The notes under the pieces are model-generated. The model was not told where the DNA came from and made no database searches. It saw only the letters and a list, made by a program, of their open reading frames with translations. A program made the translations under genes and the position numbers. Below are positions 2,272 through 28,680 of a stretch of 64,000 nucleotides of DNA, piece by piece (positions within the stretch are counted from its first letter, which is position 1; each line of letters begins with the position of its first letter). Origin of the DNA: Mobula hypostoma (Eukaryota); contig NC_086101.1 of NCBI RefSeq assembly GCF_963921235.1, forward strand, positions 31,124,001 through 31,188,000, given 5' to 3'.

Positions 2272-5200
2272 CTTCGCAACATCATACGGCAGCATTAAGG
2301 GCATTGTGTCAACCGAAATAACATGAAGCAATACAAGAAGGCAGAGCACCACCACCTTCTCAAGGGCAAGGTGGGACTACCAGCTCGTGCACCTTGAGTG
2401 AAAATCCAAGGCAGCAGAATACGGGGGATACAGCCTGCAGAAGTTTGCACTGTACTCAGGGAGGGCACAGGTAGGAGGCAGGAGCAGAGCAGCTTTAATG
2501 GGTGAGAAGCAACATGTGATGTTAATAGGGATGGGAGCTGGGGAGACTGGAATGAGTAAGCAGAGGGCTGGATGGGTGGATAGTGAAGGGTGGGATGGGC
2601 AGGGAAGTGACAGATGAAGGGAGCCTGAAAGGGGGAGTCCTGGGGGCATGCCTGAAATGTTTCAACTACTCACCTGTCCCTCTCGGTCCTGTTCACTCAC
2701 AGTCCCACTTCCTCTCCATGTCTCACCTATCTTCTCTTACCCCCACTAACCGATCCCTCTTCCCATGCATACTGGCTGCATCTCTTCCCAATCAGTTCCA
2801 TCCTGTTTCCCCATCCCAGTCCTCTGCTCCCTTTGGGTCCCGGACAGACCAACTATCCCTCATTCCCTTGGCAATGAGCTGGTCCCAACCCTCCCTTCCC
2901 CACAGACCCCATCCGGCACTGAGTCTGACCCGGTGGTGCAGAAGGGTGGTACGGAGAAGAGGAGAGCTGTCGTCATTGGAGACTCTATAGTCAGGGGACC
3001 AGACAGGAGATTTTGTGGGCGTGAGAAGGACACCCGCATGGTTTGTTGCCTCTCAGGTGCCAGGGTCCAGGATGTCTCTGACCGGGTGCACGACATCTTG
3101 GTACGAGAGGGAAAGCAGCCAGAAGTCGTGGTACATGTTGGAACCAACGACATAGGCAGGAAGAGGGATGAGGTCCTGAAGTGTGAGTTTCGGGAATTAG
3201 GCAGAAGGCTGAGGAACAGGACCTCAAGAGTGGCGTTCTCAGGATTGCTGCCAGTGCTACAAGACAGTGATGGTAAGAATTGGAGGAGATGGCAGTTGAA
3301 TGCGTGGCTGAGGAGTTGGTGCAGGGAGCAGGGTTTTAGATTTTTGGATCATTGGGATCTCTTCTGGGGAAAGTGGGACCTGTACAGATTAGATAGGTTG
3401 CACCTGAACTCGAGGGGGAGCAATATCCTTGCAGGTAGGTTTGCTAGCATGGTTCGGGAGGGTTTAAACTAATTTGCGAGGGGGATTGGACCCAGAGAGA
3501 TAGAGCAGTGAAAGAAGCGCATAGAGTAAAGCCAGATCTAACATACAGAGAGGCTTTGAGGAAAGAGAAGCAGAATAAACCATGTACAAACAGTAAGGTA
3601 GAATGGCTGAAATGTGTGTACCTCATTGCAAGAAGCATCGGGAACAATAGTCATAGTCATACTTTATTGATCCCGGGGGAAATTAGTTTTCGTTACAGTT
3701 GCACCATAAATAATTAGATAGTAATAACACCATAAATAGTTCAATAGTAATATGTAAATTATGCCAGGAAATAAGTCCAGGACCAGCCTACTGGCTCAGG
3801 GTGTCTGACCCTCCAAGGGAGGAGTTGCAAAGTTTGAAGGCCACAGGCAGGAATGAATTCCTATGACGCTCTGTGTTGCAACAAAGGTGATGAACTGAGA
3901 GCTTGGATACATACATGGAATTATGATGTAGTGGCCATTACAGAGACTTGGCTGGCACCAGGGCAGGAGTGGATTCTCAATATTCCTGGATTTCTGTGCT
4001 TTAAAAGGGATAGAGAGGGCGGAAAAAGGGGAGGAGGGGTGGCATTACTGGTTAGAGATACTATTCCAGCTACAGAAAGGGTGGGTAATGTAGCAGGATC
4101 CTTTTTTGAGTCAGTATGGGTGGAAGTCAGGAACAGGAAGGGAGCAGTTACTCTATTGGGGGTATTCTATAGGCCCCCTGGTAGCAGCAGAGATACAGAG
4201 GAGCAGATTGGGAGGCAGATTTTGGAAAGGTGCAAAAATAACAGGGTTGTTACCATGGGTGACTTTAACTTCCCTAATATTGATTGGCACCTGATTAGTT
4301 CCAAGGGTTTAGATGGGGCAGAGTTTGTTAAGTGTGTCCAGGATGGATTCCTGTCACAGTATGTGGACAGGCCGACCAGGGGGAATGCCATACTAGATCT
4401 AGTAGTAGGTAATGAACTGGGTCAGGACACAGATCTCTCAGTGGATGAGCATCTGGGGGACAGTGACCACCGCTCCCTGGCCTTTAGCATTATCATGGAA
4501 AAGGATAGAATCAGAGAGGACAGGAAAATTTTTAATTGGGGAAGGGCAAATTATGAGGCTATAAGGCTAGAACTTGCAGGTGTGAATTGGGATGATGTTT
4601 TTGCAGGGAAATGTACTATGGACATGTAGTCAATGTTTAGAGATCTCTTGCAGGAGGTTAGGGATAAATTTATCCTGGTGGGGAAGATAAAGAATGGTAG
4701 GGTGAAGGAACCATGGGTGACAAGTGAGGTGGAAAATCTAGTCAGGTGGAAGAAGGCAGCATACATGAGGATTAGGAAGCAAGGATCAGATGGGTCTATT
4801 GAGGAATATAGGGAAGCAAGAAAGGAGCTTAAGAAGGGGCTGAGAAGAGCAAGAAGGGGGCGTGAAAAGGCCTTGGCGAGTAGGGTAAAGAAAAACCCCA
4901 AGACATTCTTCAATTACGTGAAGAAAAAAAGGATGACAGGAGTGAAGGTAGGACCGATTAGAGAGAAAGGTGGGAAGGTGTGCCTGGAGGCTGTGGAAGT
5001 GAGCGAGGTCCTCAATGAATACTTCTCTTCGGTATTCACCAATGAGAGAGAACTTGATGATGGTGAGGACAATATGAGTGAGGTTGATGTTCTGGAGCAT
5101 GTTGATATTAAGGGAGAGGAGGTGTTGGAGTTGTTAAAATACATTAGGACGGATAAGTCCCTGGGGCCTGACGAAATATTCCCCAGGCTGCTCCACGAGG

Positions 5201-7064
5201 CGAGGGAAGAGATTGCTGAGCCTCTGGCTAGGATCTTTATGTCCTCGTTGTCTACGGGAATGGTACCGGAGGATTGGAGGGAGGCGAATGTTGTCCTCTT
5301 GTTCAGAAAAGGTAGTAGGGATAGTCCGGGTAATTATAGACCCAGTGAGCCTTACATCTGTGGTGGGAAAGCTGTTGGAAAAGATTCTTAGAGATAGGAT
5401 CTCTGGGCATTTAGAGAATCATGGTCTGATCAGGGACAGTCAGCATGGCTTTGTGAAGGGCAGATCATGTCTAACAAGCCTGATAGAGTTCTTTGAGGAG
5501 GTGACCAGGTATATAGATAAGGGTAGTGCAGTGGATGTGATCTATATGGATTTTAGTAAGGCATTTGACAAGGATCCACACGGTAGGCTTATTCAGAAAG
5601 TCAGAAGGCATGGGATCCAGGGAAGTTTGGCCAGGTGGATTCAGAATTGGCTTGCCTGCAGAAGGCAGAGGGTCGTGGTGGAGGGAGTACATTCAGATTG
5701 GAGGATTGTGACTAGTGGTGTCCCACAAGGATCTGTTCTGGGACCTGGATGTGGGGGTAGAAGGGTGGGTTGGCAAGTTTTCAGATGGCACAAAGGTTGG
5801 TGGTGTTGTAGATAGTGTAGAGGATTGTCAAAGATTGCAGAGAGACATTGATAGGATGCAGAAGTGGGCTGAGAAGTGGCAGATGGAGTTCAACCCGGAG
5901 AAGTGTGAGGTGGTACACTTTGGAAGGACAAACTCCAAGGCAGAGTACAAAGTAAATGGCAGGATACTTGGTAGTGTGGAGGAGCAGAGGGATCTCGGGG
6001 TACATGTCCACAGATCCCTGAAAGTTGCCTCACAGGTGGATAGGGTAGTTAAGAAAGCTTATGGGGTGTTAGCTTTCCTAAGTCGAGGGATAGAGTTTAA
6101 GAGTCGCGATGTAATGATGCAGCTCTATAAAACTCTGGTTAGGCCACACTTGGAGTACTGTGTTCAGTCTGGTTGCCTCACTATAGGAAGGATGTGGAAG
6201 CATTGGAAAGGGTACAGAGGAGATTTACCAGGATGCTGCTTGGTTTAGAGAGTATGCATTATGATCAGAGATTAAGGGAGCTAGGGCTTTACTCTTTGGA
6301 GAGAAGGAGGATGAGAGGAGACATGATAGAGGTGTACAAGATAATAAGAGGAAAAGACAGAGTGGATAGCCAGCGCCTCTTCCCCAGGGCACCACTGCTC
6401 AATACAAGAGGACATGGCTTTAAGGTAAGGGTTGGGAAGTTCAAGGGGGATATTAGAGGAAGGTTTTTTACTCAGAGTGATTGGTGCGTGGAATGCACTG
6501 CCTGAGTCAGTGGTGGAGGCAGATACACTAGTGAAGTTTAAGAGACTACTAGACAGGTATATGGAGGAATTTAAGGTGGGGGGGTTATATGGGAGGCAGC
6601 GTTTGAGGGTCGGCACAACATTGTGGGCCGAAGGGCCTGAAATGTGCTATGTTCTGTCCGAGGTTTGCATCCTGCACAGGTCCAGGGTCTAACCCACTGT
6701 CTTCCCCAGAATCCCCACGCCGTCATCCTCTATACAGTAATCGTAGTCCATTCCTCTCAGATGTCACTCACTGCCAGGAGACCACGCCCCCTCCATGCCC
6801 CGCCTCTCTTCTTCACGCCACGCCCACTGACCCGGGAACTGTCCCCTCTCCACCTTCTACTAACCCGCTCCATGATTGGGAGATGCTCCCCACTCAGAAG
6901 CCCTTGGCTCCCGGCTTGTCCCCTGTCCCCCCCTACCTTGTGTCATTGCCCCCGGACCTCTCCCGCGGCCCGGTCCGCGTAAACTGACGCCCCTCACCTG
7001 TCACCAGCGCCAGCCGCGAGCTGAGGCGGAGACCCAGCCCCAACCTTTTGCCGCTCGCCGCCAT
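2075..7064 (-). CDS. HSD17B8: HSD17B8 (Ke6/FABGL, short-chain dehydrogenase), coding exons 1-2; gene continues beyond the left edge of the window
   Basis: Exon 1 is 7064-6998 (ATG; MAASGKRLGLGLRLSSRLALVT-G|gtgagg). Exon 2 is 2271-2075 (aag|GGGSGIGRAVCQRFADEGASVAVVDID...FLTDVTSPQSVHSLVTSIQ|gtatga). The spliced product has the SDR TGxxxGIG motif. Sequence and intron positions resemble human HSD17B8 as recalled (LALVTG|AGSGIGRAV...VQ|). Confidence 0.88.
2905..6657 (+). mobile_element. CR1-clade LINE, large decayed copy (SGNH esterase ORF1, APE-RT ORF2) in HSD17B8 intron 1
   Basis: ORF1 motifs VIGDSIVRG, VHVGTND, DRLHLN. ORF2 motifs ITETW, MGDFNFP, SDH, QHGF, GVPQGSVLG, broken by stops and frameshifts; RT catalytic motif decayed to FSDGT. 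Boundaries approximate. Confidence 0.92.
3648..3879 (-). mobile_element. Rex1/Babar-like LINE 3' end inserted in CR1 ORF2
   Basis: Reverse complement of the 3' end of the element at 14903-16970, including the (ATGACT)n tail; TSD AACAA at 3643-3647 and 3880-3884. Confidence 0.85.
6998..7064 (-). CDS. HSD17B8: HSD17B8 exon 1 (67 nt, phase-1 donor)
   Basis: ATG in a CpG-rich patch, ending ...LALVT G|GTGAGG donor. Confidence 0.87.
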
Positions 7065-9608: not shown

Positions 9609-11242
9609 TGAAGGTGGAGCTGTAGTCAATGAACAATAATCTGTACAAGGTGTATTTACTGTGCAGATGCTCCAGAGATGAGTGTAGGGCCAGGGAGATG
9701 GCTTCTGCTGTGGACCCATTTTGGTGGAAGGTGAAATACCGTGGATCAAGGCGAAGGAGATTTTTTGACAAGAATAAGTCGGTGGATGTTGCCTGCATGA
9801 CCCTAGGAAAGCATCAACAAGTTTTCTCATGGGTCCTGCTCCCGCACATAGCAGCCACAGTGATTTGGTGGACCGACTTCAAAACTGGGTTGACCACAGA
9901 AGACAGGGTAATGGTGCAGGGTTGTTATGACTGGTGTTACACATGGATCAGTGCTGAGACCTCTGTTGTTTCTGAAATATAAAAATGATTTAAACAAAAA
10001 TATAGCAGGGTTGTTTGGTGAGTCAAAAAGTGGTGGTGCTGTGAATCGTGGGGAAGGTCGTCAAAGAATTCAACAGGAAATTTGGCCAGAGAAATGGCAA
10101 CAGGAAGGTTACTCCAGACAAGTGCGAGGTGTCAAATGTAAGAAGGTGTAGAGTAGATGATGAGACACTTTGGAACACTGATGCACAGAAAGATTGTAGG
10201 GAGTAAGACCAAGGCTGCAAACAGTAACACAAGTAGTGGGTAAATAATGTTCACTGCATGCCTGCCTTCATGGGTTGATGTGTTGAGTACAAAAGTTAGC
10301 TGGTCATGATGCAGCTGTATACATTTTTAGTTAGGCTGCAGTGTGTAGTCCTGGGTCTCTCCATTATGACAAGGATTTGGAGGCTTTAGAGAGGGTGCAG
10401 AAGGGATTCACCAGGATATGTCCTATCTCAAGAGTATAAGCTACAAGGAGAGGTTGGATCATCCTGGTTTATTTCTCGGTGTGTCAGAGGCTGAGGGGAG
10501 ACCTGTTTATAAAAGGATGAGAGGCATTGATGGGGTAGATGGTCCTGAAGCAAGATTTTGACCTGAAACACAACATTTCCTTTCCCACCATAGAGCTGAG
10601 TTTCTCCTGCAGATTGTCTTGTTGTTGGATAGTGAGCTAAGCTCAGTAACTCCCTGACGTCAGAGTTCAGCGATGCAGCAGAGGGGGGTGGGTGAGGGGT
10701 GCTGGTGTCCTGACCCAACCCAGCACACCACGGGGGCATCTTCAAGAGGTGCTGCCTAAAGAAGACGGCATCGATCACTAAGTACCCTCGCAATCAGACA
10801 CGCCTCTTCTTATTAATACCATCAAAGAATACTGGAGATCCAGAGTCAAGAAACATCTTCTTCCGCTCAGGCATCAGATTTCTGAACAGTTCACAAACCT
10901 GTGAACACTACCTCATTATTTCTTTTTTTTCAGAATTTATTTATTTTTATAACTTAAAGTAATTTTAGTTATGCCTTTACATTGCAATGTTGTCTCAGGA
11001 CAATTTTCATATGATATTAATGATAATCAATCTGATTCTGATTAATGTACGTATTTTTGTGAATGTTGTTTCTCTGAAGCCATGTGTCCGTGATGCTCTT
11101 GTAAGTTTTTCATTGCACCTGTGTATACATTTACTTGGGCATATGGCAATAAACTGCACTTTGACTTTTGCGGCAGGCACGCTGGCTGAAGTGAATTTGC
11201 AAATGTTGTTTGAGAGACGTTGTCGGTCTTTGTAGTGGCAGA

Positions 11243-12609
11243 TCAGCTGCTGTGAGTACGGGACCACTGCCACCACGCTAAGGTGCCAATGCCCAGAGCG
11301 ATCGCAGAGAGCTCTGCGTTGCCCACCAGCGCACACCACACTGCATTGTAGAACAGCAGGCCCATCAGACTCCACAGGCTGTGTGCGGAGCCCCTCCGGG
11401 ACAACTGCAGCCCCACCATGCCGGATACGATCCAGATTAGACCCCAGAGTGGAGAGGAGCACAGCAGGAGAAGGCACAGGCCAGCGTAGCCCTGGGTGCC
11501 ACAACACCACCAGCAGACCTTGGAGACACTGCCACAGCCCAGCAATGATAAGAATGTTCCAGCATATCCCAGCACACCACAGCAGACCCACCAGATCCAA
11601 GCATTATTGTCTAACAGCCACAGGAGCCCTAGGAAGCCCACAAAGCTCAGCTCCAGCCAGGAAGGGACTGTGTAACCTCGGGATGACAGACACCACCCAA
11701 AGAAACTCAGCCCAACCAGGCAGATTCCAGGGAGCCCAGCAGAAGCCAGCAGGAAGCAGGAGAGCCCAGCGTGTCCCAGCACACCACAGTACTGCCAAGA
11801 GATCCCAGCCAGGTTCCTGTCGTCCAGCAGAGACCACCAGAGACCGGAAAATCCCAGCACACCACAGCAGACCAAGTACACCTCCAGAAAGTCGGCTCTC
11901 CCTGGCCAGGCAGCGGCAAGGGAGATCAGCAGGCCGGAACAGAGCCAGTCCCAGCGCCTGCCCGGGACCCCGTCGCTGCGGTCCCCAGGTGGAGCCGCGA
12001 GGATGGCATCCTCTCGCTTGGGCTCTGGCGGCCCAGCCAGCCTCTCCAGGCCCAGGCCGGGATCGTCGGCAGAAGAAGGGAGCAGCCGGAGGGGCTCGGC
12101 ATTCCTGCCACCCAGTGCCGCTCCTGGGCTGCAGAACGGGAAGAGCCTCTGGGTGAACCGGTCATGGTAGGTGTGGAAGTGGGACATCCCATCGGCGTTA
12201 TAAAAGGACACCCGGCCTCCCTCGTAGTCCAGGTAAACCCCCACCACCCGGGGCTGCAGATCCAGCTGCAGCTCCTCCGAGGCACCGGTGAAGGCCTTGT
12301 ATGTCACCCCGTTCCTGAGTCCCAGAGTCCAGTATCCGTGGGTCGGAGACAGCACAATGCTTCCCTTCCTCCTGGTCAGCTCGCTCGCCACCCCGACAGT
12401 CCAGGAGATCTTGCGGCCCACCTTCACCTCCCAGTAGTGCCTCCCCATCGCAACGCCCCCGAAGGCAAGGACACAGGGACTGGGGTCAAGGCTCAGCAGG
12501 TGTTCAGGCCACAGCTGCTTCTCGGGCCGGGGCCCCGTGCTGCTCAGATCCTCGGATAAGGAGAGCCACGGGCTGACTGTGGCCAGGTTAAGGATCAGTG
12601 GGCCGGAGC
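11243..12609 (-). CDS. Terminal exon: PRY-SPRY (about 12609-12077), acidic/Pro linker and hydrophobic tail (11953-11243)
   Basis: ORF 11243..12622; acceptor ttgtgttccacag| at 12610; canonical B30.2 motifs. Confidence 0.88.
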
Positions 12610-15600
12610 CTGTGGAACACAACAGAGGGCAGATCAGGGGGTCTCACTTCGTCTGAGCCGGCCAGAGATTCATTTGTACCCCTAGACCGATTACTACAGC
12701 AAGCTCAAACTAACCCTGTGACTGGACGTTACAGACGAAGAGTGGAACTCAAGTACCACCTCCCACTGAGGGAAAACAGCAGCAACATTTAAAACTGGGC
12801 CCAAGATTACACAGGGAAGTTTCTGTCAAGACATATGGAGGGGTGGGATGTGTAGGGAGAGCAATACACAAAATATGGGGCACTGGACATTAACGGCAGA
12901 CAGCCCTATACAAAATAAACCACCCAATCAGGCCAGATCTCCAAAAGGTAGACTCCCCAGTGGTGTACACTCCCCCCACAATATACCCACATATGCCCTC
13001 CACCATCCCACATATGCCCCATGACAATGTATCCACAGCAACCGGAATGAACACCTAGATATTCTGTCGGAACAGCTCTGGCTCTGACTCTGGTATGCTA
13101 GTTTGAATGCACGGGAAGGTAAGAAGCTGCAAAGTGTTGTGGGCAGAATACATCGCAGTACATCCCTCCCTGTCATCAGAATTAGCTGCAGAAGGTACTG
13201 CCTCAAACATCTAGCATCAGAGAACACCAAACTATCTGCTGGAAGAACTCACTGGCACAAGTGGCAACTGCATGAATGCTTCAACCCAAAATATCAATGA
13301 CTGCTTTCCTCCCACAGATGCTGCTTGACCTGCTGAGCTCCTCCAGCTGGTCGGTCGTTGCAGCAGAATCCAGCATCTGAAGTCTCTTGTGTCTCTACCA
13401 TCAAAGATCACCACTGTCCAGGCCATGCCATCTTCTTGCAGCTACCATTGGGCAGGAGGTATGGAAGCCTCAAGTCCCACGGGGTTCAGGAACGGCTACT
13501 TCCCTTCAAACATTCAATTCTTGAACCAGTCTGAACAACCCTAGTCACTGCCTCCTTAGATTGACATTTTGACAACTTTTCACTACAATGGGCTTTGCTT
13601 CTTTGTTCTGAACAAATTTATTTCTCATTTATGATTTTCTTGTGAATGTTGTGTATGTGATGCAATGGGCTTGTGATGCTGCTACATGTAAGTTTTCCAT
13701 TGCACCGTGCACACATGTATTTGTGCATTTGAAAATAAACTCAACTTTAACTTTGACTTTGACCAATTGTTGTCCCAAAAGCAACCTGGTCCTATATCAC
13801 GCTACTGCTTTTGCCATCTTTTCTCTGCTAACGTCCTGCTGTACTGTAACAAGCCCAGCAGAAGCAGCAGCTTATTGGCTGCAGGATAATCAATGTCTCT
13901 CCTTTTCCCCTGAATTGCCAGAACATTTAGCTGGGCATGGGAATGGGAAGCTGAAGGAAGATTTAGAAGGGAGAATAACTAACCTAGAAATAGACAGTGA
14001 GAAATCAGAAGATTGTGGGTGATTAATAATTGCAGAAGTGAAGTCTGGCTGTGTTTAATGGTACACATCCAATGCACAAAGAGAGATTGAGTCAGGAAAT
14101 AAGCTGAGGGCACTAAGGGACACATGGAGGAACAGTTAATTAGCTCAGTGAAAGTCAAAGTACTGTAGATACTAGAAATTGGAAATTTAATAAAAATAGA
14201 ACATGTTAGAAACGCTTAGCAGGTCAGGTAGCTTCTGTGGGGAGAGAAACAGAGCTAACCGGTCACGATGAAGACCTGATGAAGTCCAGACAAAAGGCCT
14301 TTGAGCTGAAATGTTAATTCTGTTTCTCCTCATGCAGGCCTGCTGGGTGCATCCAGAATTTTCTGTTTTTATTATAATTTAGCTAACAAGCAGGGACAGC
14401 AGTAGTCCCATTAAATGTCAGGAAAGACTGGGAGAGCTGAATGGCTCACTCTAGTGTTCCTATTTCAGGTCTTCTGTCCTTTGAGGCATTAGGAGTTTTC
14501 GGGATGAGACAGAAAGAGGAATAAAAAAAGATTGTGTTCAAGAAAGGGGCCAATAGGTCTTTAGAGCCCTCCCTTACTCCATCAGACACCCTTTCTGCAT
14601 TGTCCTCTCTCCCACTTCTCTTCAACACCTTCCATGTCCTCCCTCCCTCTGCTGGCGGCCGTTCAATGTCATTCATGGACAACTCTGCGCAATTGGTTCC
14701 CAGTGCAGTCCCAGCTCCACACTGGGCCAACCACTGTCTGGTGAGGGATCATCAGTGCTCTCTGTTCAGTGCGAAATCCTGGTGACTTCCCTGGAAACGG
14801 GGTTGCTGGTACGCTAAGCACGGAGAACACAGAACAGTACGCAAAGGGACAGACACTATGGCCCTCAAAGTTGTGCCAAACTAACTAAATTATTCATTAA
14901 ATGGCAGACCACAGTACTTGTGCTTGCAACACTGTGTGTCCGACAGAGTGATCAGCAGAACTGGGGCTCCACAGGGGACTGTCTTGTCTCCCTTTCTTTT
15001 CACCATTTACACCTCGGACTTCAACTACTGCACAGAGTCTTGTCATCTTCAGAAGTTTTCTGATGACTCTGTCATAGTTGGATGCATCAACAAGGGAGTT
15101 GAGGCTGAGTACAGGGCTACGGTAAGAAACTTTGTCACATGGTGTGAGCAGAAGCATCTGCAGCTTAATGTGAAAAAGACTAAGGAGCTGGTGGTGGACC
15201 TGAGGAGAGCTAAGGTACCGGTGACCCCTGTTTCCATCCAGGGGGTCAGTGTGGACTTGGTGGAGGATTACAAATACCTGGGGATACGAATTGACAATCA
15301 ACTGGACTGGTCAAAGAACACTGAGGCTGTCTACAAGAAGGGTCAGAGCCGTCTCTATTTCCTGAGGAGAATAAGGTTCTTTAACATCTGCCGGACAATG
15401 CTGAAGATGTTCTACAAGTCTGTGGTGGCTAGTGCTATCATGTTTGCTGTTGTGTGCTGGGTCAGCAGGCTGAGGGTAGCAGACACCAACAGAATCAACA
15501 AACTCATTCGTAAGACCAGTGATGTTGTGGGATGGAACTGGACTCTCTGACGGTGGTGTCTGAAAAGAGGATGCTGTCCAAGTTGCATGCCATCTTGGAC

Positions 15601-18600
15601 AATGTCTCCCATCCACTACATAATGTACTGGGTGGGCACAGGAGTACATTCAGCCAGAGACTCATCCCACCGAGATGCAACACAGAGTGTCATAGGAAGT
15701 CATTCCTGCCTGTGGCCATCAAACTTTACAACTCCTCCCTTGGAGGGTCAGACACCCTGAGCCAATAGGCTGGTCCTGGATTTATTTTACATATTACTAT
15801 TTAACTATTTATGGTTTTATTACTATTTATTATTTATGGTGCAACTGTAAATAATAAACGGGACGTTTTCAGAATGGCAGGCGGTGACTAGTGGGGTACC
15901 GCAAGGCTCAGTGCTGGGACCCCAGTTGTTTACAATATATATTAATGACTTGGATGAGGGAATTAAATGCAGCATCTCCAAGTTTGCGGATGACACGAAG
16001 CTGGGTGGCAGTGTTAGCAGTGAGGAGGATGCTAAGAGGATGCAGGGTGACTTGGATAGGTTGGGTGAGTGGGCAAACTCATGGCAGATGCAATTTAATG
16101 TGGATAAATGTGAAGTTATCCACTTTGGTGGCAAAAATAGGAAAACAGATTATTATCTGAATGGTGGCCGATTAGGAAAAGGGGAGGTGCAACGAGACCT
16201 GGGTGTCATTATACACCAGTCATTGAAAGTGGACATGCAGGTACAGCAGGCGGTGAAAAAGGCGAACGGTATGCTGGCATTTATAGCGAGAGGATTCGAG
16301 TACAGGAGCAGGGAGGTACTACTGCAGTTGTACAAGGCCTTGGTGAGACCACACCTGGAGTATTGTGTGCAGTTTTGGTCCCCTAATCTGAGGAAAGACA
16401 TCTTTGCCATAGAGGGAGTACAAAGAAGGTTCACCAGATTGATTCCTGGGATGGCAGGTCTTTCATATGAAGAAAGACTGGATGAACTGGGCTTGTACTC
16501 GTTGGAATTTAGAAGATTGAGGGGGGATCTGATTGAAACGTATAAGATCCTAAAGGGATTGGACAGGCTAGATGCGGGAAGATTGTTCCCGATGTTGGGG
16601 AGGTCCAGAACGAGGGGTCACAGTTTGAGGATAGAGGGGAAGCCTTTTAGGACCGAGATTAGGAAAAACTTCTTCACACAGAGAGTGGTGAATCTGTGGA
16701 ATTCTCTGCCACAGCAAACTGTTGAGGCCAGTTCATTAGCTATGTTTAAAAGGAAGTTAGATATGGCCCTTGTGGCTACAGGGGTCAGGGGGTATGGAGG
16801 GAAGGCTGGGTTCTGAGTTGGATGATCAGCCATGATCATAATAAATGGCGGTGCAGGCTCGAAGGGCCGAATGGCCTACTCCTGCACCTATTTTCTATGT
16901 TTCTATGTTTCTATGTAACGAAAACTAATTTCCCCCCAGGATCAATAAAGTATGACTATGACTATGACTAAATGCTTAACTAAGCTAATCCCTTCTGCCT
17001 ATACAATGTCTATATCTCTCCATTTCCTGCGCATTATGTACCTATCTAAGACTGTCTTAAGTACGTCTATCATATCTGCCCCCACACTAACCCTGGCAGT
17101 GCATTCCAGTCATTCTCCATTCCCTGAGTAAAAAGCTTGCCCCATGCGCCTTTGAATTTAACCTTCTCACCTTGAATGCATACCTCTAGTGTTAGCCATT
17201 ATGACCCAAGGAAAAAGACAGCAGCTATATCTATATGCCCATAACAATCTGTAATCACATGTTGCATATAGAGTTCATGGAAATTCTGATCACCGGAAAA
17301 GTTTGCAAAATCGCACAGTAACATATGTCGAAGAACCGCCCCGGAATTTCACAGACAGATGAGCCACAAGAGACAGCAGATGTCAGAATCTGGAGCAGCA
17401 CTCAATCTGCTGGAGAAACTGAGAGGGTCAAGCAGCATCCAAGGGGAGAAAGAAACTCTCAACATTTCAGGTAGAAACCCTGCATCAGAATGAGAGTGGA
17501 GAGGGGAAATGGCCAGAATAAAGAGGGGATGGGGAGCCATGAGACAGGCACCCGCAGGTGATTGGTGGACTTGATGGGGGAGTCTAGTACGAGAGGGCAT
17601 GACTTAAGGATTGAAGGGCACCCATTTAGAACAGAGATGCAAAGAAATTTTTTTAGCCAGAGGGTGGTGAATCTATGGAATTTGTTGCCACAGGCAGCAG
17701 TGGAGGCCAAGTCATTAGGTGTATTTAAGGCAGAGATTGATAGGTATCTGAGTAGCCAGGGCATCAAAGGTTATGGTGAGAAGGTGGGGGAGTGGGACTA
17801 AATGGGAGAATGGATCAGCTCATGATAAAATGTTGGAGCAGACTCGATGGGCTGAATGGCTGACTTCTGCTCCTTTGACTTATGGTCTTATGGACTGGCG
17901 GGGGGGGGTGAAATATGACAGGCATGTTACAGCAGGTATGGGAGAGGAAGGGTGGATTTGGACAGTGTCAGGAGGACGAGAGATGTAGGGGTGGGGGTAG
18001 AGACCATGAGTGAACTGCATATGTAGTAACTGGATGGAATCAGAAGGGGAAATGGCACAATGACGGGGGATGGGTGGATTGGCGGGGGGGGGGGTTGTGG
18101 GAAAGGGGACAAAAATGGGAGGACCAGACTAGGATGAGAGGTGAGTGGGACGGGGTGAAAAGGAGGAAGTGGGCATTCAGCCAAGTCAATTCACAGACCA
18201 AAATGGAGCGTGTGCAGTTCCTGTCAGGAGTTGTCTGCAGAACTCAGCACTGACCATGGTGGTCTAACACAAAGGTAATGAAGGCTCCTGTGGACTCACG
18301 GAGAGGGGGGCAGGCTGCTCTGCAGTCCCACGTAACCCAGGCCAATCGATTCCAATGGCACTGCAGGGTACTGGCCAGTGGAAGGGGGTAGAAAATTATA
18401 AGGGGCTGTGATAAGGGACCTGGAGCTTCAGATATCGGGGGATGGGTGGGGAGAGGGGAGGGTGGACTGAAATTGGGGGTGGAATACTGAAAACCAGGCA
18501 TAACCACGGCTGAATTATACAGAAAGAGGCCACTCATCACAACTCTTGCACCTGAACCTCCTCCAGCAATTCCTCAGCACAGCCCTCTATTCCTCCTTCT

Positions 18601-21514
18601 CATGGTGACCCATCTTCCTCTTAAACGTCTCTGCATTACTCAACGCAACCACGGGGAGTGGGGAGTGCTCACATTTACAATGCGCTTTGGGTAAAGAAGG
18701 TTCTCCCAATCACTCCTGAGGAGGGGTGATGTGTTCGGCATCTGCCAACTGAAGCAAAATGAGTCCAGCAAGTACAGCAGGATATTGGTTGTTGTTGTAT
18801 GGGCTGAGGAAAGGCAGATGGAGTTTAGTCTAGACAAGTGTGTGGAGTTGCACTTTGGGAGGTCAAATGTAAGAAGTAAGTACACAGTAAATGGCAGGGC
18901 CCTTGGGAGCACTGAAGTACAGAGAGACCTTTGGGTGCAAGTCCATAGCTCTCTGAGAGTGGCAACATATGTAGTTAGGATGGAAAAGAAGGTGTCTTCA
19001 TTGTTCAGGGTGCTGAGTTTAAAAGTTGGTAAGTCAGGTTGTAGTGTACAAATAAATTTTGGTTAGACTGTATTTGGAGATTTGTGTGCATTTCTGGTCA
19101 CCACATCACAGGAAGGACGTGGAGGTGTTGGCGAAGGTGTAGAAGAGGTTCACCACAATCCCCATCTGAAATAGAGAGCATGAGTTATAAGGAGAGGCTA
19201 GGCAAACTGGGATGGTTTATTTCGGAGTGTTGGAGACTGAGGGGTGACCTGACAGAAGATTATTAAAAATAGAGAGGGGTTAATTTAAGATGAGGGGGTG
19301 AACTTAAAGAAGATTTACAAGTTTTTTTACACAAAGTAGTAGATGCCTGGAGCACGCTGCCAGAGGTGATTGTGAGGCAGATATAACAATGTTCAGGAAG
19401 CATTTAGTCAGGCACATGGGCAGGCAGGAAATGGAAAGAAAAAGAGCATTTTCAAGTACATAGTATTAGTTCAAATTGGAATCATAGTCAGCATAGACAT
19501 TGTGGGCTGAAGTGCCTGTTCTTCTGTTGTGCTGTTCTGTGTAAAGTATCCTGGACAATATTCATCCTGTAGTTACATCACCTAGAAGCTATTCTGCTCA
19601 ATCTCTCTGCTGCTGAGGGCGTCTGCTGGTTGAAGTTTGATGTGGATGACAACGGGGACTGCTCTCCAGCCAAGCAGAGTCATTGAGTCATATACCATGG
19701 AAACAGGCCCTTTGTCCCAACTGGTCCATGTGGACCGAGATTCCCATCCAACCGAGTCCCATTTTCCCACACTTGGCCCATTTCCCTCTTAAACTTTCCT
19801 GCCTATGTGTCTATCCAAGTTCCTTTTTAATATTGTTAATGTACCTGCCTCAACTACTTCCTCAGGCAGCTCATTCAGTCTCATGACCAGTCTCTGGGTA
19901 AAACAAGTTGCCCTTCAGTTCCTTATTAAATCTCTTCCCTCACACTTTAAAACAATCCCTTCTAGTTCTTGATTCCCCAGTCCTGGGAAACAGACTATAC
20001 ACATTCACCCTGTTGATTTCCCTCATGATTTTATAGATCTCTACAAGATCATCCCTCATTCTTACTGTATACTGTATACTCCAGTGAAAAAATGTCCTAA
20101 CCTAATCGACCTCTCCCTCTACCTCAGTCCCTCAAATCCTGGCAACATTATTGTAATCTCACTCTTCCTAGTGTAACAGCATCTTGGGACATCCTGAGGC
20201 TGTGAATAGCCCCAAGGACCTCTTCCTTTCTTACCTGGTCTGATGACAGCTCCCAACTTTTTCCACAAACTGTACTTTAAAAGGCCTTTTGGTAAGTCCA
20301 GAGAGAGATCTTCAGATAAAGGCTGCAGGTCTTGTGAACACCTGTACATGTAGGAAGACTGTACATTAACAATACTAAAACAAAGCAAATGTCCCAATGT
20401 TGAACATTTTTGGATATCTATTCGCGAATGAACTACTTACCTCAGCTCTGAAAATCCCTTCAAAAACAGAAAGAAAAAATTAAGAGAATCAGAATCAGAA
20501 TTAATATCCTGCTTTATGTCGTGAAATTTGTTTTTGCTTTATCTTATTGTGAAATGCTGCTGTTATTTTTACCACCAGCAGAATATTTAATTGTGCCGTC
20601 TAGACAAATCACATAGTTGCTTCAACTGATTGCTCAACGGAGATGAAATTATACTCTGGCAAGCAATTAGCTCAAAAATTAAATGCATAACACAGACACT
20701 CACAGACTTACTCATCCATAAACCCACCTCTGATAATTGTTGGATGGTCTATTCCTTTTTAAATGAATATTAGGTACACCAATTTTTTTAATGTTTATAT
20801 TTTATATATTTACAGATCACAGCACGGTAACAGGCCCTTCTGGCCCAGCGAGCCTGCTCTGCCCAGTTACACCCTTGTGACCAATTCACCATTAACTACT
20901 ACTCGTTTGGAACATGGGAGGAAACCGGAGCCCCTGGCGGAAACCCACACAATCACATGGAGAAAGCACAAGCTCCTTACATTCAGCGGCAGTATTGACC
21001 CAAGGCCTCTGGTGCTGAACAGCATCATGCTGAACTCTACGCTACCATGGAGACCCTTATATTCTCTGTTTTAAGTTTATAACATGAATCCTGTTTGCTC
21101 CAGCTTGTACCTGCAGGAACTGAGAGCTGTCTTCATCCTGCAGCTGTTCCTCCGCCTTTGCCAGATCTGCTGTGATGCGTGTCAGACTTTCCTGGATCTC
21201 TTCCAGTCTCAGTTCCATCCTTTTCAAAATGTTCTGCTTTTTTCCTTCCAGCCTTTCGGCCACGGTTTGGACCTTTCCCTTCAAGAGCTCTGTTGTTTCA
21301 GCAAAGCAAAGTCGGACCTGGTCCACCTCAGTCACAAAAGCCTTCTGCAAGGCAGACAGATTCCAGTGTTAGCAAGCAGGCAGAGAACAAGTAACTGAGT
21401 GACCATGGAGGGGATGTCCATTGAACTCACCTCCAACTCAGCCATGTTCTGCTTCTGTTTAATCTGGGCACTGGCAATGGCCTTCAGTGTGTCCCAGATC
21501 TCATTCAGAGCGGC
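11243..21514 (-). CDS. TRIM-derived coiled-coil + B30.2/PRY-SPRY protein with long hydrophobic multi-TM-like C-terminal tail (5' end unresolved; 602 codons readable)
   Basis: Phase-compatible GT-AG exons: 21514-21431 (84 nt), 21344-21111 (234 nt, coiled coil), 20457-20441 (17 nt), 20341-20235 (107 nt, KGLLKYSLWKKLGAVIRP), 12609-11243 (1367 nt; GRHYWEVKV, VGVYLDYEGGRVSFYNAD, then the hydrophobic tail). The total of 1809 nt is open to the TGA. Confidence 0.8.
14903..16970 (+). mobile_element. Rex1/Babar-like LINE 3' part, interrupted by a CR1
   Basis: GAPQGTVLSPFLF, LQKFSDDS, YKYLG motifs; tail AATAAAGT(ATGACT)n at about 16944-16970. Confidence 0.85.
15851..16913 (+). mobile_element. Young 5'-truncated CR1 LINE (open RT C-terminal ORF 15884-16816)
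   Basis: GVPQGSVLGP and FADDTKL intact over 310 aa; (TTTCTATG)n tail; TSD TGTAA at 15846-15850 and 16914-16918. Confidence 0.92.
17578..17890 (+). mobile_element. CR1 3' fragment
   Basis: TRGH...FFSQRVVNLWN motif and CR1 3'UTR. Confidence 0.8.
18775..19540 (+). mobile_element. Decayed CR1 3' fragment
   Basis: QMEFSLDKCVELHFGRSN, QRDLWVQVH, MSYKERLGKLG. Confidence 0.75.
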
Positions 21515-22562
21515 CTACAATCACAAAGACAGAATTGAGTGAATCCATGCAGTGGGTTTGGACAGTGAGGCACAGTAGCCTATTTCACCTTCCAGTTTCA
21601 ATAAGAGTGAAAGAGTCCGTAACAATACACAACCACCCTGCAGATGTCATTTGCCCAACCGTTGGCTCTTGTGTCTTCAAATTCTGAGTCCAGAATACCC
21701 ACCCCTTCCCTTCCTCAGACAGTTCCGCCTCCAGCTCTCACCATTGGTCCAGAAAGTCCACGCGCTGACCAATGGAAAGGTCAGCAAGCTTTCCATTACC
21801 CAACCAGAGACTCCCCAATGGGCAGCCTAACCATCTGTCTTCATCCCACATCACTATGAACAGTACACAAAGAAGAAACGTTGTTGCCACTATGACCTTT
21901 TTTCTTCGGGATGTTGGACCCTGCAAAGGCCAGCAGTTTATTTGTCAATTCTTGGAATATATAGGACTATCCCATACCATTGGCAGCCCTGCTTCAGGGT
22001 CTAGGGAAAGTGCTCTGCAATTTACTTCATAAGTTCTTCCCAAGCAAACAACGCAGCCGACATAAGTACCATGGTCCAGTGAATATGCATATGCTTTACA
22101 GCACACGGGCACACAGAATCTCCACATGAACCTCATGAGCACACACTATGTAGAACACACACACACACACACGCACAATGTATAAGATATACGGACTAGT
22201 AAGGGCAGAAGTAGGAAGGGTATTGAAGCTTTCATCAGGTGGGGCGGGGGGGGAGTTACAGACCGGAATATAACTGTGTGCATCAGGCGTTTTGTATAAA
22301 CTATTAACACTCCCTAAACACGGACACAAAGTGATGGGGGTAAAGAGCGGGTCGAGCAGTATTTTTAGAGAAACAATTAATATCTCACGTCAAAGATGAT
22401 CAGAACTGAGACGTTCAACGCACCAAAGACGCTGCCCGACCCGCCGTGTGTTTCCAGTATTTTGTGTTTTGCAGCTCCTTGGAATTATTATTTTACAGTA
22501 TTCCCACTGGAGAGTGGCGTAAAGCTCAATTGCACAGGAGTAAAGCACCGAGAGCTGGAGTG

Positions 22563-22933
22563 NNNNNNNNNNNNNNNNNNNNNNNNNNNNNNNNNNNNNN
22601 NNNNNNNNNNNNNNNNNNNNNNNNNNNNNNNNNNNNNNNNNNNNNNNNNNNNNNNNNNNNNNNNNNNNNNNNNNNNNNNNNNNNNNNNNNNNNNNNNNNN
22701 NNNNNNNNNNNNNNNNNNNNNNNNNNNNNNNNNNNNNNNNNNNNNNNNNNNNNNNNNNNNNNNNNNNNNNNNNNNNNNNNNNNNNNNNNNNNNNNNNNNN
22801 NNNNNNNNNNNNNNNNNNNNNNNNNNNNNNNNNNNNNNNNNNNNNNNNNNNNNNNNNNNNNNNNNNNNNNNNNNNNNNNNNNNNNNNNNNNNNNNNNNNN
22901 NNNNNNNNNNNNNNNNNNNNNNNNNNNNNNNNN
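22563..22933. other. Assembly gap (371 N)
   Basis: Run of N. Confidence 1.
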
Positions 22934-23289
22934 ATGCCATGAACATCGATTTATTGAACTTCCGGAAATTGCCCCCCCCCCACCTTCTCCTTCACCATCC
23001 CGCATTCCTGATTCCCTCTCACCTTATCTCCTTACCTGCCCACCGCCTCCCTCTGGTGATCTCCCTCCTTCCCTTTCTTCCATGGTCTTCTATCGTCTCC
23101 CATCAGATTCCCCCTTCTCCAGCCTTTTATCTCTTTCACCAATCAACCTCCCAGCTCTTTACTTCACCCCTCCCCGTTTCACCTGTCACCTGCCACCTTG
23201 TACTACCTCCTCCCCTCCTCCCACCTTCTTACGCTGACCTCACCGAATAGACTTCTCGGCCCGAACAGTCGACTCTACTCTTTCATAAA

Positions 23290-23920
23290 TGCTGCCTGGG
23301 CTGGAGCCGGTCCCCGCAGCGCCCCGGGATGAACGCGGTGGGTCTGCCGATTCAGCCGACCGGTGAGTTCCCGTTCGCGTTCCTCAAACCCGGCTGTCAG
23401 TCCGCCAACCTCGCCCGAAGCAGCAGTGCAGTCACCGGTCGGACCTTTCGCAGTTCCTCAGTGCCGGGACCGTCATGCAGAAGGAACCGGCCACCTTCAG
23501 CTCCTCGTCCTTCCAGAGCTGCTGTGATTCAGCTACGGTCCGCAGGGTGAACGTGTCGATAAGAACCCCAGTCCCAGCTGATCAGATCCCCGGAATTGGA
23601 ATTTTAGTGTTTGGATTTATTTATATTACATGTTTTGGAGTTGGATTTGGTTTACTATTGTCACATGTGCCGGGATACGGTGATACAGTGGGGATGAGTT
23701 CTGGGTTTAACCTGAGGCCGCCTTTCCACGCGGCGTAGCACAGAAAGGCTTCCTGCTCCGACGCACCAGACTCCGCATCACCTATTTCCTCGCTGATGCC
23801 GGAGCTGAGGATATCTCGGAGCGGGCGCGGGCCTCGCTGCGGGAGCAGGGTGAACAGCCAACGGTCACGGTACACGACGCACCAGGGTGTCCGTCTCCAA
23901 AGGGATGAGACGCCACAAGC
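23290..23920. promoter_or_regulatory. CpG-rich region between the divergently oriented B30.2 genes (candidate promoter)
   Basis: Visible CpG enrichment relative to flanks; lies 5' of both gene models. Confidence 0.4.
23329..23362 (+). CDS. Candidate first coding exon of the butyrophilin-like gene (MNAVGLPIQPT-G)
   Basis: gggATG in a CpG-rich patch with a strong phase-1 donor CG|GTGAGT, compatible with the exon at 28753 (would give 454 aa); no independent support. Confidence 0.35.
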
Positions 23921-24752
23921 TATGCTTGTGCATGGGGAGAAGGGGGGCTTAAATGAAGGCTGAGGACCAGGGGCCAGCATCGCAAAACCGAAGTTCTCAC
24001 TGTACTTCGGTCCACATAACAATAATAAGCAATTTTGCCGATTTACCAATCACTCCTTGTGCCAAAATGCCAGCAAGAATAAAAACAGAACACAAGACAA
24101 GAAACTGGGAACAGGATCAAGCCACTCGGCCTCTCAAATCCACTCCAACCCCACCATTGCACATGATCACGCGCTCAACTCCTGTTCTCCGCCAGCTCCC
24201 CATAACCCTCGATTTCTCAATTTTTCAAATATTAATCCATCTCCAACTTAAAACTACCTCAAGATCTGAACTCCATCACCCTCAAGGGCAGAAAATTCCA
24301 GGGATTAGTTCCACCCTCGTTCTGTACACCTCGGTTTTAAATGACCGGACCCTTATCTTGTATCCATTTCCCCTCGTTTGTGACTCTACCAGTGGTGGAA
24401 ACACCCAGCATCTACCCGTTAGGATCTCATATGCTTGAATAAGGCCAGCGCTCCTTCTTCTAACCTCAAGGAGCTCCGACCCAGACTGTGTTGGTGTTTT
24501 ACAGGGCGGTTAATTCCCCACGGTGCCCAGAGCTGGTCGCCTCGAGTATGGGAAGCCTTGACAGTGACTGTAATCGCGGTCAGCGTAACGTCCTGGATAT
24601 ATTTTCGGAAAAGTAAGTATCAAAGAAGTGATAGAAGACTTAGGTGGGAAGGAAAATTATGAGAATTTCACCAGTGATTAGGAAGGCCAGGGGACGTAAA
24701 ATGTATCTTCGTTGGAAGATGCGCTTCCCCGCAGAGGGCCGCCAGTGGTTCG

Positions 24753-27849: not shown

Positions 27850-28680
27850 TGCAACGCACACAAAATGCTGGTGGAACGCAGCAGGCCAGGCAGCATCTAT
27901 AGGAAGAAACACAGTCAACATTGCGGGTCAAGACCCTTCATCAGGACTAACAGAAAAAAGAGATAGTAAGAGATTTGAAAGTGAGAGGGGGAGGGGAGAG
28001 ACCCAAAATGATAGGAGAAGACAGGAGGGGGAGAGATGAAGCCAAGAGCTAGGAAGTTGATTGGCAAAAGGGATACAAGGCTGGAGACAGGGGAGGATCT
28101 TGGGACAGAAGGCCTTGGAAGAAAGAAAGGGGGAGGGGAGCACCAGAGGAAGATAGACAGCAGGCAAGGAGTTATTGTGAGAGGGAAAGAGAGAAGAAAG
28201 AGAGAGAGAGATAAATAAATGAATAAATACATACATACATAAATAAATAAATAAGAGTTGGGGTAAGAAGGGGAGGAGGGGCATTAACGGAAGTTTGAGA
28301 AATCAGTGTTCATGCCATCAGATTGGAGACTACCCAGACGGTATATAAGGTGTTGTTCCTCCAACCTGAGTGTGGCTTCATCTCGACAGTAGAGGAGGCC
28401 GTGGATTGACATATCGGAATGAGAATGGGACATAGAATTAAAATGTGTGGCCACTGGGAGATCCTGCTTTCTCTGGTGGACAGAGCATAGGTGTTCAGCG
28501 AAGCGGTCTTCCAATCTGCGATGGGTCTCACCAATATATAGAAGGCCACACCTGGAGCACCGGACGCAGTATATCACCCCAGCCGACTCACAGGTGAAGT
28601 GTCGCCTCACCTGGAAGGACTGTCTGGGGCCCTGAATGGTGGTGAGGGAGGAAGTGTAAGGGCATGTGTAGCACTTGTTT
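27850..28680 (-). mobile_element. Penelope-like element 3' part (GIY-YIG endonuclease and terminal repeat)
   Basis: CESAGVIYCVRCSRCGLLYIGETHRRLEDRFAEH; pyrimidine-rich 3' region and shared terminal repeat. Confidence 0.88.

What the first reader, a model, noticed from the sequence alone, without database searches (positions are those of the whole stretch)
11243..12609. B30.2/PRY-SPRY domain fused to a ~236-aa polytopic membrane-like tail
Seen: the terminal exon does not stop after SPRY (...FPFCSPG...EPLRLLP). It runs through a ~40-aa acidic/Pro linker into 236 aa (11953-11243) of roughly 8-10 hydrophobic Trp/Cys/Gly/Leu stretches, separated by short polar turns (PGRAD, DDRN, SRG, DNN, RRG). 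Known: B30.2 is normally C-terminal in TRIMs and butyrophilins, and the membrane TRIMs TRIM13/TRIM59 have a short C-terminal TM region and no B30.2. I know no family with coiled-coil + B30.2 + multi-pass tail. Inference: a membrane-embedded B30.2 sensor or scaffold (organelle-anchored restriction factor, or a ligand-gated/pore-like module). The juxtamembrane CC motifs could be palmitoylated.
Basis: partly seen in the sequence, partly recalled or inferred. Interest (0 to 1): 0.88.

Follow-up and report, generated by a model that had tools for sequence, protein, structure and literature searches.

The report
Shark/ray TRIM with multi-pass membrane tail
The last exon of this ray gene really does join a PRY-SPRY (B30.2) recognition domain to a 236-residue hydrophobic, all-helical tail, and because sharks and rays have kept that tail under purifying selection, it defines an undescribed membrane-type variant of the TRIM ubiquitin-ligase family.

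Summary
Window 12609-11243 (minus strand) is one exon. It encodes PRY-SPRY (Pfam 5e-23), a 44-residue acidic/Pro linker and a 236-residue Leu/Gly/Ser/Trp/Cys tail that runs to the stop codon.

The open frame is not chance: it has 0 stops against 6.1 expected, p about 2e-4. The tail is not a read-through artefact either. Nine shark and ray orthologues carry it in the same exon, almost without gaps and ending at the same place. A truncated skate copy also keeps it.

Tail omega is 0.32 (LRT against neutrality 99.8), compared with 0.19 for SPRY. The linker is far less conserved (14-27% identity).

The tail contains an ancient 95-residue duplication. One unit models confidently as four helices of 19-26 residues (pLDDT 80). 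This gives about ten helices in all. Lys/Arg counts fit a topology with both ends in the cytosol.

No Pfam, PDB, AlphaFold DB or Atlas relative was found, and no paper describing it was found.

In sharks the protein is a full RING-B-box-coiled-coil-B30.2 TRIM. In this window and in Hypanus no RING or B-box is found.

The best reading is a membrane-anchored class-IV TRIM. Membrane insertion, location and function are inferred. RNA evidence for this window is almost nil.

The parts
11243..12609 (-). Terminal exon (exon D): PRY-SPRY + linker + hydrophobic tail + stop codon
   Evidence: ORF and acceptor site. A single ungapped tblastn HSP covers the equivalent exon in four shark loci.
12086..12609 (-). 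PRY-SPRY (B30.2) domain, exon residues 1-175
   Evidence: Pfam SPRY 5.3e-23, PRY 2.2e-4. 47-60% identical to sharks. omega 0.19.
11954..12085 (-). Acidic/Pro-rich linker, exon residues 176-219. It contains a small conserved motif (REDAI in the window; [RV][ED]DA[TI] across species).
   Evidence: 14-27% identity to sharks, with indels. Pairwise dN/dS 0.35-1.4.
11246..11953 (-). 236-residue hydrophobic tail, about ten predicted helices
   Evidence: Conserved in 10 other elasmobranch proteins. omega 0.32, LRT against omega=1 gives 2dlnL 99.8. AF2 predicts it all-helical.
11606..11890 (-). Repeat unit A of the tail (95 residues, four helices)
   Evidence: DNA repeat spacing 78/207/78. A and B are 24-38% identical in every species, against a background of 22% or less. 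Gap-free alignment A3. AF2 pLDDT 80.1.
11321..11605 (-). Repeat unit B of the tail (95 residues, four helices)
   Evidence: Same as unit A.
20235..20341 (-). Exon C (coiled-coil to PRY connector, ...SEDLSLDLPKGLLKYSLWKKLGAVIRP)
   Evidence: tblastn to Hypanus P0001 residues 139-179. Splice sites ag|G ... CAG|gtaaga, and the junction with exon D reads in frame.
21111..21344 (-). Exon B (coiled coil, 78 residues)
   Evidence: 77% identical to Hypanus, 43-49% to sharks. Weak TRIM_CC Pfam hit, E 0.004, below the cut-off. Splice sites.
21431..21514 (-). Exon A (start of the coiled coil, AALNEIWDTLK...NMAELE). It is preceded by a splice acceptor, so a further 5' exon is unresolved.
   Evidence: There are stops in all frames just upstream. 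No RING or B-box was found in 21400-28800.

Best explanation
This is the terminal exon of an elasmobranch-specific class-IV TRIM gene. Its PRY-SPRY (B30.2) domain is followed, after a loosely constrained acidic linker, by a conserved integral-membrane domain of about ten helices. That domain is one leading helix, two copies of an ancient four-helix unit, and one closing helix. There is no signal peptide and the N-terminus is a RING, so the RING, B-box, coiled coil and B30.2 should sit in the cytosol, tethered to an endomembrane with both ends of the tail on the cytosolic side. In sharks the protein would then be a membrane-resident E3 ubiquitin ligase whose B30.2 recognises a membrane-proximal target. 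In this ray and in Hypanus the RING and B-box appear to be missing, leaving a coiled-coil-B30.2-membrane protein that could only scaffold or sense, much as butyrophilin B30.2 domains do. Shown here: the ORF, the domain content, conservation, purifying selection, the internal duplication, predicted helices and synteny. Inferred: membrane insertion and topology, which compartment, ligase activity, and any immune role.
For: ORF and Pfam domains. The open frame is not chance. Nine full orthologues carry the tail. They align almost without gaps, with about 45 invariant tail positions, many of them W, C or G, and they share a C-terminus. An exhaustive HMMER search of the tail against 1.84 billion proteins finds only this family, plus the skate copy and one satellite artefact. 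The tail lies in the same exon in Heptranchias, Stegostoma, Rhincodon and Chiloscyllium. Pairwise dN/dS: tail 0.16-0.46, SPRY 0.17-0.56, linker 0.35-1.4. ML omega: tail 0.32, SPRY 0.19; LRT against omega=1: 99.8 and 155.2. The 95-residue duplication is present in every species. One unit models as four helices of 19-26 residues at pLDDT 80.1. The whole tail models as all-helical. Only 6% of tail residues are charged, and 19-residue Kyte-Doolittle means reach 1.9-2.0. In a 10-helix N-in/C-in model, the cytosolic loops carry 4.5 Lys/Arg on average and the opposite loops 1.0. Shark orthologues have an intact RING, B-box and TRIM_CC. Synteny (butyrophilin-like gene, this gene, adh_short gene) is conserved.
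Against: No dedicated transmembrane predictor was available. The whole-tail AF2 model has low confidence (pLDDT 58.5). RNA evidence in this window is one 191-nt contig over 11226-11416 in one library of uncertain type, and nothing lies over exons A-C. The 5' end of the window's gene is unresolved, and no RING or B-box is found, so the local copy could be decaying. The function of the B30.2 and of the tail is untested.
Confidence: 0.7

Rival explanations
1. The family is real, but the copy in this window is a decaying relic. The RING and B-box are lost, the 5' exon and a micro-exon are unresolved, and expression is not detectable. On this reading the intact terminal exon reflects past selection, not present selection.
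For: No RING or B-box in 21400-28800. There are stops in all frames upstream of exon A. The micro-exon between exons B and C was not identified with confidence. RNA contigs are absent over exons A-C. The skate orthologue is clearly truncated by a retroelement.
Against: The 455-codon exon has no stop or frameshift. It is 86-88% identical to Hypanus in both SPRY and tail with no gaps. The Hypanus gene model has the same RING-less structure, which suggests a stable derived form in stingray-like rays. The N run at 22563-22933 could hide an exon. The RNA libraries examined are small (115-241 million letters).
Confidence: 0.15
2. The tail does not cross the membrane. It is a hydrophobic hairpin or monotopic domain (reticulon-, caveolin- or lipid-droplet-like), or a lipid-anchored Cys-rich helical repeat, that sits in one leaflet or in a hydrophobic assembly.
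For: The first and last hydrophobic stretches have cores of only about 14-16 residues. Several turns are only three residues long (LPG, SSP, DNN). Approximate insertion energies are marginal. The tail is very rich in Trp (9%) and Cys (7%), residues that favour interfaces and acylation.
Against: AF2 on the repeat unit gives four helices of 19-26 residues packed as an up-down bundle. Its nearest structural look-alikes, although not significant, are mostly small four-TM membrane proteins. The Lys/Arg asymmetry fits alternate crossing of the membrane.
Confidence: 0.1
3. The tail is a chance open frame or an annotation read-through into an A-poor, repeat-rich 3' UTR.
For: The tail DNA is only 11% A on the coding strand, and a second frame has just one stop. 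The tail matches no known family.
Against: Only 0.02% of dinucleotide shuffles are stop-free. The alignment across sharks and rays is near gap-free with a shared stop position. omega is 0.32, and neutrality is rejected at 2dlnL = 99.8.
Confidence: 0.02

Closest known systems
Class-IV TRIM proteins (RING-B-box-coiled coil-PRY/SPRY; TRIM39/bloodthirsty-like, TRIM69, 'zinc-binding protein A33', 'nuclear factor 7' as named in NCBI models)
   Same: Shark orthologues have every class-IV domain in the usual order. PRY-SPRY lies in one terminal exon. The gene sits beside a canonical TRIM paralogue and a butyrophilin-like gene.
   Different: Canonical members stop a few residues after SPRY, as the neighbour at 48342 does. 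This clade continues for about 280 more residues into a polytopic hydrophobic domain. The ray forms also lack a detectable RING and B-box.
Membrane TRIMs of class XI (TRIM13, TRIM59); also zebrafish btr31 (RING-TM-B30.2; PMC3137616)
   Same: A TRIM ubiquitin-ligase scaffold tethered to a membrane by hydrophobic sequence.
   Different: By established knowledge, TRIM13 and TRIM59 have a single C-terminal helix and no B30.2. In btr31 the TM replaces the B-box and coiled coil in the middle of the protein. Here there are about ten helices placed after the B30.2. No sequence similarity to either was seen.
Butyrophilins / BTNL (Ig ectodomains, one TM helix, cytosolic B30.2)
   Same: A B30.2 domain held at the cytosolic face of a membrane. 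A butyrophilin-like gene is the conserved neighbour.
   Different: There is no signal peptide or Ig domain. The order of B30.2 and membrane segment is reversed. The anchor is multi-pass instead of single-pass.
Polytopic RING E3 ligases (HRD1, gp78, TRC8/RNF139, MARCH family)
   Same: In function, the shark form would also be a RING ligase embedded in an endomembrane by several helices.
   Different: These are unrelated in sequence. Their RING follows or is flanked by the membrane domain, and none carries a coiled coil plus B30.2.

Membership tests
TRIM class IV (RBCC-B30.2) | PRY-SPRY (B30.2) domain at the C-terminal side of a coiled coil | tested here: met
   Pfam SPRY 5.3e-23 and PRY 2.2e-4 in the window exon. 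The coiled-coil exons align to the orthologues. TRIM_CC is above its cut-off in P0003.
TRIM class IV (RBCC-B30.2) | N-terminal RING finger | tested here: inconclusive
   Present in six shark orthologues. Not found in the window between 21400 and 28800 or in the Hypanus model. The N run at 22563-22933 cannot be read.
TRIM class IV (RBCC-B30.2) | B-box zinc finger | tested here: inconclusive
   PF00643 hits P0003 at residues 85-122. It is absent from the readable window sequence upstream of exon A.
TRIM class IV (RBCC-B30.2) | Protein ends shortly after SPRY | tested here: not met
   About 280 further residues follow in all 10 orthologues. The neighbouring paralogue ends normally.
TRIM class XI (TRIM13/TRIM59) | RBCC followed directly by a single C-terminal TM helix, with no B30.2 | tested here: not met
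   B30.2 is present and there are about ten helices.
Butyrophilin family | Signal peptide and IgV/IgC ectodomains N-terminal to one TM helix and a B30.2 | tested here: not met
   The orthologues start with a RING and have no Ig Pfam hit. The membrane part lies C-terminal to B30.2.
Polytopic integral membrane domain (generic) | Several hydrophobic helices of spanning length, with few charges and a positive-inside loop bias | tested here: met
   6% charged residues and KD peaks of 1.9-2.0. Helices of 19-26 residues at pLDDT 80. 4.5 K/R on one side and 1.0 on the other.
Polytopic integral membrane domain (generic) | Experimental membrane integration and topology | not testable with these tools
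   Needs fractionation, protease protection or glycosylation mapping. DeepTMHMM and TOPCONS were not available.

The most novel reading that the evidence does not exclude
The tail is an autonomous membrane module in its own right, not just an anchor. It is an orphan 2 x 4-helix domain, with an invariant Glu in helix 2, a conserved Asp after helix 5, and Gly/Cys/Trp packing motifs. It may have arisen by stop-codon loss plus internal duplication in the elasmobranch ancestor. It might act as a channel-, transporter- or scramblase-like unit controlled by ligand binding to the attached B30.2. Its persistence in rays without the RING, and in skate without most of the SPRY, would then reflect selection on the membrane domain itself.
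Probability: 0.15. Interest if true: 0.85.

Novelty: new variant of a known kind. Interest (0 to 1): 0.66.

Why it matters
TRIM-B30.2 proteins are among the main families of innate-immune sensors and ubiquitin ligases. All described class-IV members are soluble and end at the B30.2 domain. A clade that has kept a ten-helix membrane domain behind the B30.2 since before sharks and rays diverged adds a new architecture to the family. It places a B30.2 recognition surface permanently at a membrane, as butyrophilins do, but on a ligase scaffold. It also offers a natural series (full RBCC form, RING-less form, tail-only remnant) for asking what each part contributes. The tail is an orphan domain with a clear internal duplication, so it is also a candidate case of a membrane domain born from a 3' extension. 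The family is limited to elasmobranchs, which narrows its reach, and function is entirely untested.

Tried and rejected
1. ESM Atlas feature search of the tail: best score 0.69, recognition 904, no structure search possible.
2. Pfam on the tail and on all 11 tails at E up to 10: nothing meaningful.
3. PDB sequence profile search: 0 hits.
4. Foldseek on the whole-tail model against AFDB clusters and the PDB: only TPR-, HEAT- and 14-3-3-like helical repeats at TM 0.33 or less. The model confidence is too low for these to be useful.
5. Foldseek on the 95-residue unit: generic four-helix bundles, E 0.47 or worse. I do not claim any relationship to cytochrome b561, DUF2231 or SFT2-like proteins.
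6. Profile search with tails only, to look for stand-alone relatives. It returned nothing and did not even recover P0010, so it was saturated by low-complexity words and is uninformative.
7. P0011 (1739 aa, 27 stretches) is a translated satellite-like repeat, not a relative.
8. DNA for Hypanus, Scyliorhinus and Heterodontus could not be fetched because the files are too large. No ray-branch dN/dS was possible.
9. Two read-laying runs on four RNA(?) runs gave one 191-nt contig over the end of the tail and nothing on exons A-C.
10. Search for the Hypanus first exon in the window: only a weak match containing a stop at 23286-23236.
11. A 20-nt micro-exon candidate at about 20625 (LKQLCD) fits the reading phase but matches Hypanus poorly. 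I left it unresolved.
12. Two literature searches found no description of this architecture.

Full report
**1. The observation**

- On the minus strand an ORF runs from 12622 to the stop at 11243.
- The sequence ttccacag|GCTCCGGC gives a splice acceptor, so the exon starts at 12609.
- Pfam places PRY at residues 5-50 and SPRY at 57-167 of the 455-residue exon product. It finds nothing in the last 236 residues.
- After '...FPFCSPG...NAEPLRLLP' the frame continues through a 44-residue acidic/Pro linker. It then runs into 236 residues made of L47 G32 S26 W21 A18 C16 V15, with only 15 charged residues.
- G+C stays at 0.57-0.69 through the tail and falls to 0.32-0.37 just past the stop.
- GC3 is 0.70, against 0.54 at codon positions 1 and 2.
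- The coding strand of the tail is only 11% A, which by itself favours open frames. Even so, 5000 dinucleotide-preserving shuffles give 6.1 stops on average, and only 0.02% have none.

The description and coordinates are therefore correct, and the open frame is more than chance.

**2. Conservation**

*Which proteins carry the tail*
- A search restricted to linker plus tail found nine proteins, all from elasmobranchs:
  - Hypanus sabinus (86% identity);
  - Pristiophorus, Heptranchias, Heterodontus, Cetorhinus and Scyliorhinus (50-58%);
  - Stegostoma, Rhincodon and Chiloscyllium (40-45%).
- A second search, seeded from the sawshark tail, added nothing new.
- An exhaustive HMMER pass of the tail over 1.84 billion representative proteins found three things: this family; a 292-residue little-skate protein (P0010, 'uncharacterized protein LOC129694460'); and a satellite-like artefact (P0011).

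*How well it aligns*
- The tails align essentially without gaps and end within one residue of each other.
- About 45 columns are invariant, many of them Trp, Cys or Gly.
- In Heptranchias, Stegostoma, Rhincodon and Chiloscyllium the whole SPRY-linker-tail block is one uninterrupted exon, as it is here.

*Identity of the window protein to the sharks*

| Region | Identity | Gaps |
|---|---|---|
| SPRY | 47-60% | 0-9 |
| Tail | 40-59% | 1-7 |
| Linker | 14-27% | 5-11 |

*Selection*
- Pairwise Nei-Gojobori dN/dS is 0.16-0.46 for the tail, 0.17-0.56 for SPRY and 0.35-1.4 for the linker.
- A GY+F3X4 codon model gives omega 0.32 for the tail, 0.19 for SPRY and 0.34 for the linker. The linker estimate rests on only 40 gap-free codons and has twice the tree length of the other two.
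- Fixing omega at 1 costs 2dlnL = 99.8 for the tail, 155.2 for SPRY and 11.6 for the linker.

The tail is therefore a protein-coding domain under purifying selection, dating from before sharks and rays diverged. By my own knowledge that split is on the order of 250-300 million years old.

**3. Anatomy of the tail**

*Internal duplication*
- DNA repeats spaced 78, 207 and 78 nt apart reflect a 95-residue duplication: unit A at 11890-11606 and unit B at 11605-11321. Each unit holds a 26-residue sub-repeat carrying the motif W-x-x-C-C-G-x-L-G-[YFH]-[AS]-G-L.
- Units A and B are 24-38% identical in every species, against 22% or less for other offsets. They align without gaps in all ten species.
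- The duplication is therefore older than the shark/ray split.

*Predicted structure*
- AlphaFold2 on the whole tail with 11 sequences is all-helical but has low confidence (pLDDT 58.5, pTM 0.54).
- AlphaFold2 on the 95-residue unit with 20 rows is confident (pLDDT 80.1, pTM 0.62). It gives four helices at 2-21, 25-50, 52-70 and 76-94.
- Mapped back onto the tail, this gives one leading helix, 4 + 4 helices, and one closing helix, so about ten in all.

*Topology and hydrophobicity*
- In a model with the N-terminus in the cytosol, the loops on the cytosolic side carry 4.5 Lys/Arg on average and the other side 1.0. Asp/Glu show the opposite bias, 2.3 against 3.4. This fits the positive-inside rule with both ends cytosolic.
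Individual helices are therefore marginal, as is common in polytopic proteins.
- I had no dedicated TM predictor.

**4. No known relatives**

- Pfam, a PDB sequence profile and the ESM Atlas gave no specific match.
- Foldseek on both models against AFDB clusters and the PDB also gave no specific match.
- The 95-residue unit resembles generic up-down four-helix bundles, many of them small four-TM proteins, at E 0.47 or worse.
- Two full-text searches found no paper on such a TRIM.
- Boudinot et al. 2011 (PMC3137616) list only the single-TM class, and zebrafish btr31, where a TM replaces the B-box and coiled coil.

**5. The gene and its neighbours**

*Domain content in sharks and rays*
- Shark orthologues are complete TRIMs. 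P0003 has RING at 11-51, B-box at 85-122, TRIM_CC at 155-267, PRY at 293-341 and SPRY at 345-457, and then 286 residues without any Pfam hit.
- In the window I can place four exons:

| Exon | Coordinates |
|---|---|
| A | 21514-21431 |
| B | 21344-21111 |
| C | 20341-20235 |
| D | 12609-11243 |

- Exon A is preceded by an acceptor site and by stops in all frames. The phases of exons B and C require a micro-exon that I could not fix.
- No RING or B-box is detectable between 21400 and 28800. An N run at 22563-22933 is unreadable and was left alone.
- The Hypanus model is also RING-less and starts with a short unrelated exon. Loss of the RING and B-box in stingray-like rays is therefore likely but not proven.

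*The skate copy*
- It keeps only the last 50 or so residues of SPRY plus the tail, with retroelement sequence upstream, in-frame indels and a lost stop.

*Synteny and paralogues*
- The gene order is conserved: a butyrophilin-like gene on the opposite strand, this gene, then an adh_short gene.
- In the window the butyrophilin-like gene is the one noted as s1-142478.
- A second TRIM on the same strand has its RING at about 60864-60496 and its SPRY exon ending at 48342. It stops right after SPRY ('...GLILCRLKL*').
- The tail is therefore an addition specific to this clade. It starts where canonical TRIMs end, which is compatible with stop loss and 3' extension, or with fusion to an unknown downstream gene. 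That is inference.

**6. Expression**

- Four RNA(?) runs, held as contigs, were laid on 10800-13200 and on 20000-22500.
- One 191-nt contig (depth 4, one mismatch) covers 11226-11416, that is, the last 170 nt of the tail, the stop and the start of the 3' UTR.
- Nothing covers exons A-C or the rest of exon D.
- This neither supports nor refutes transcription through the SPRY-tail junction in this species.

**7. Reading**

- The best-supported explanation is a membrane-anchored class-IV TRIM. The cytosolic RING-B-box-coiled coil-B30.2 (sharks) or coiled coil-B30.2 (this ray, Hypanus) is held on an endomembrane by a C-terminal domain of about ten helices built from a duplicated four-helix unit.
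- How it works like known systems: TRIM13 and TRIM59, or polytopic RING ligases, for the anchoring; butyrophilins for a membrane-apposed B30.2.
- Membership: it belongs to class-IV TRIMs by RING, B-box, coiled coil and PRY-SPRY in sharks, but it fails the 'ends after SPRY' feature. It meets none of the defining features of class XI or of butyrophilins.
- Rivals:
  - a decaying local copy (0.15);
  - a non-spanning hairpin or lipid-associated domain (0.10);
  - a chance ORF (0.02, effectively refuted).
- The most novel reading still open is that the tail has an activity of its own, channel- or transporter-like, coupled to the B30.2 (about 0.15).

**8. Verdict**

This is a new architectural variant of a known family, with an orphan membrane domain restricted so far to elasmobranchs. 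Interest is 0.66. It is surprising for TRIM specialists and directly testable, but it is lineage-restricted, has no functional data, and has weak expression evidence in this window.

Noticed in passing
window 48342-60864 (minus strand): A canonical TRIM paralogue lies on the same strand. Its RING/B-box exon is at about 60864-60496, a connector at about 50366-50247, and the PRY-SPRY exon ends at 48342 with a stop right after SPRY ('...GLILCRLKL*'). Its SPRY is 55-56% identical to the shark tail-bearing TRIMs (49% to Hypanus).
   Followed up: partly
window 28753-37451 (plus strand); SPRY-like match at 37047-37391: A butyrophilin-like gene (the scan's note s1-142478) lies head-to-head with the tailed TRIM. 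The same neighbour (V-set/C2-set Ig + SPRY) sits beside the orthologue in Hypanus and Stegostoma, an Ig-domain gene in the same position in Heptranchias has no SPRY hit on record, and a C2-set Ig gene does so in Leucoraja. I did not test the 'no TM exon' claim in that note.
   Followed up: partly
window 21400-28800, N run 22563-22933: No RING or B-box coding sequence is found upstream of the coiled-coil exons. The Hypanus model lacks them too, whereas six shark orthologues have them. This suggests loss of the ligase module in this ray lineage. The assembly gap was left unread.
   Followed up: partly
L001 9953-10879 (Leucoraja erinacea, GCA_028641065.1): The skate orthologue, in conserved synteny, keeps only the last 50 or so residues of SPRY plus the tail. 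It has retrotransposon sequence directly upstream, two 3-residue deletions, a 7-residue insertion and a lost stop, yet no frameshift. It is annotated as an uncharacterised 292-residue protein.
   Followed up: partly
window 12011-12025 (minus strand), exon residues 199-203 'REDAI': A short motif, [RV][ED]DA[TI], with an invariant Ala, is conserved in all ten species inside the otherwise fast-evolving linker. It may be a docking or sorting motif.
   Followed up: no
window 2765-6505 (+), 14918-16816 (+), 28284-28694 (-) and others: Many LINE-type retrotransposon fragments (endonuclease and reverse-transcriptase ORFs) fill the introns and the region downstream of the gene. One family also matches the insertion upstream of the skate copy.
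   Followed up: no
P0011 (1739 aa, library hit): A 27-copy tandem-repeat 'protein' rich in W/C/H matched the tail at 29% identity. It looks like a translated satellite and is unrelated to the family.
   Followed up: yes
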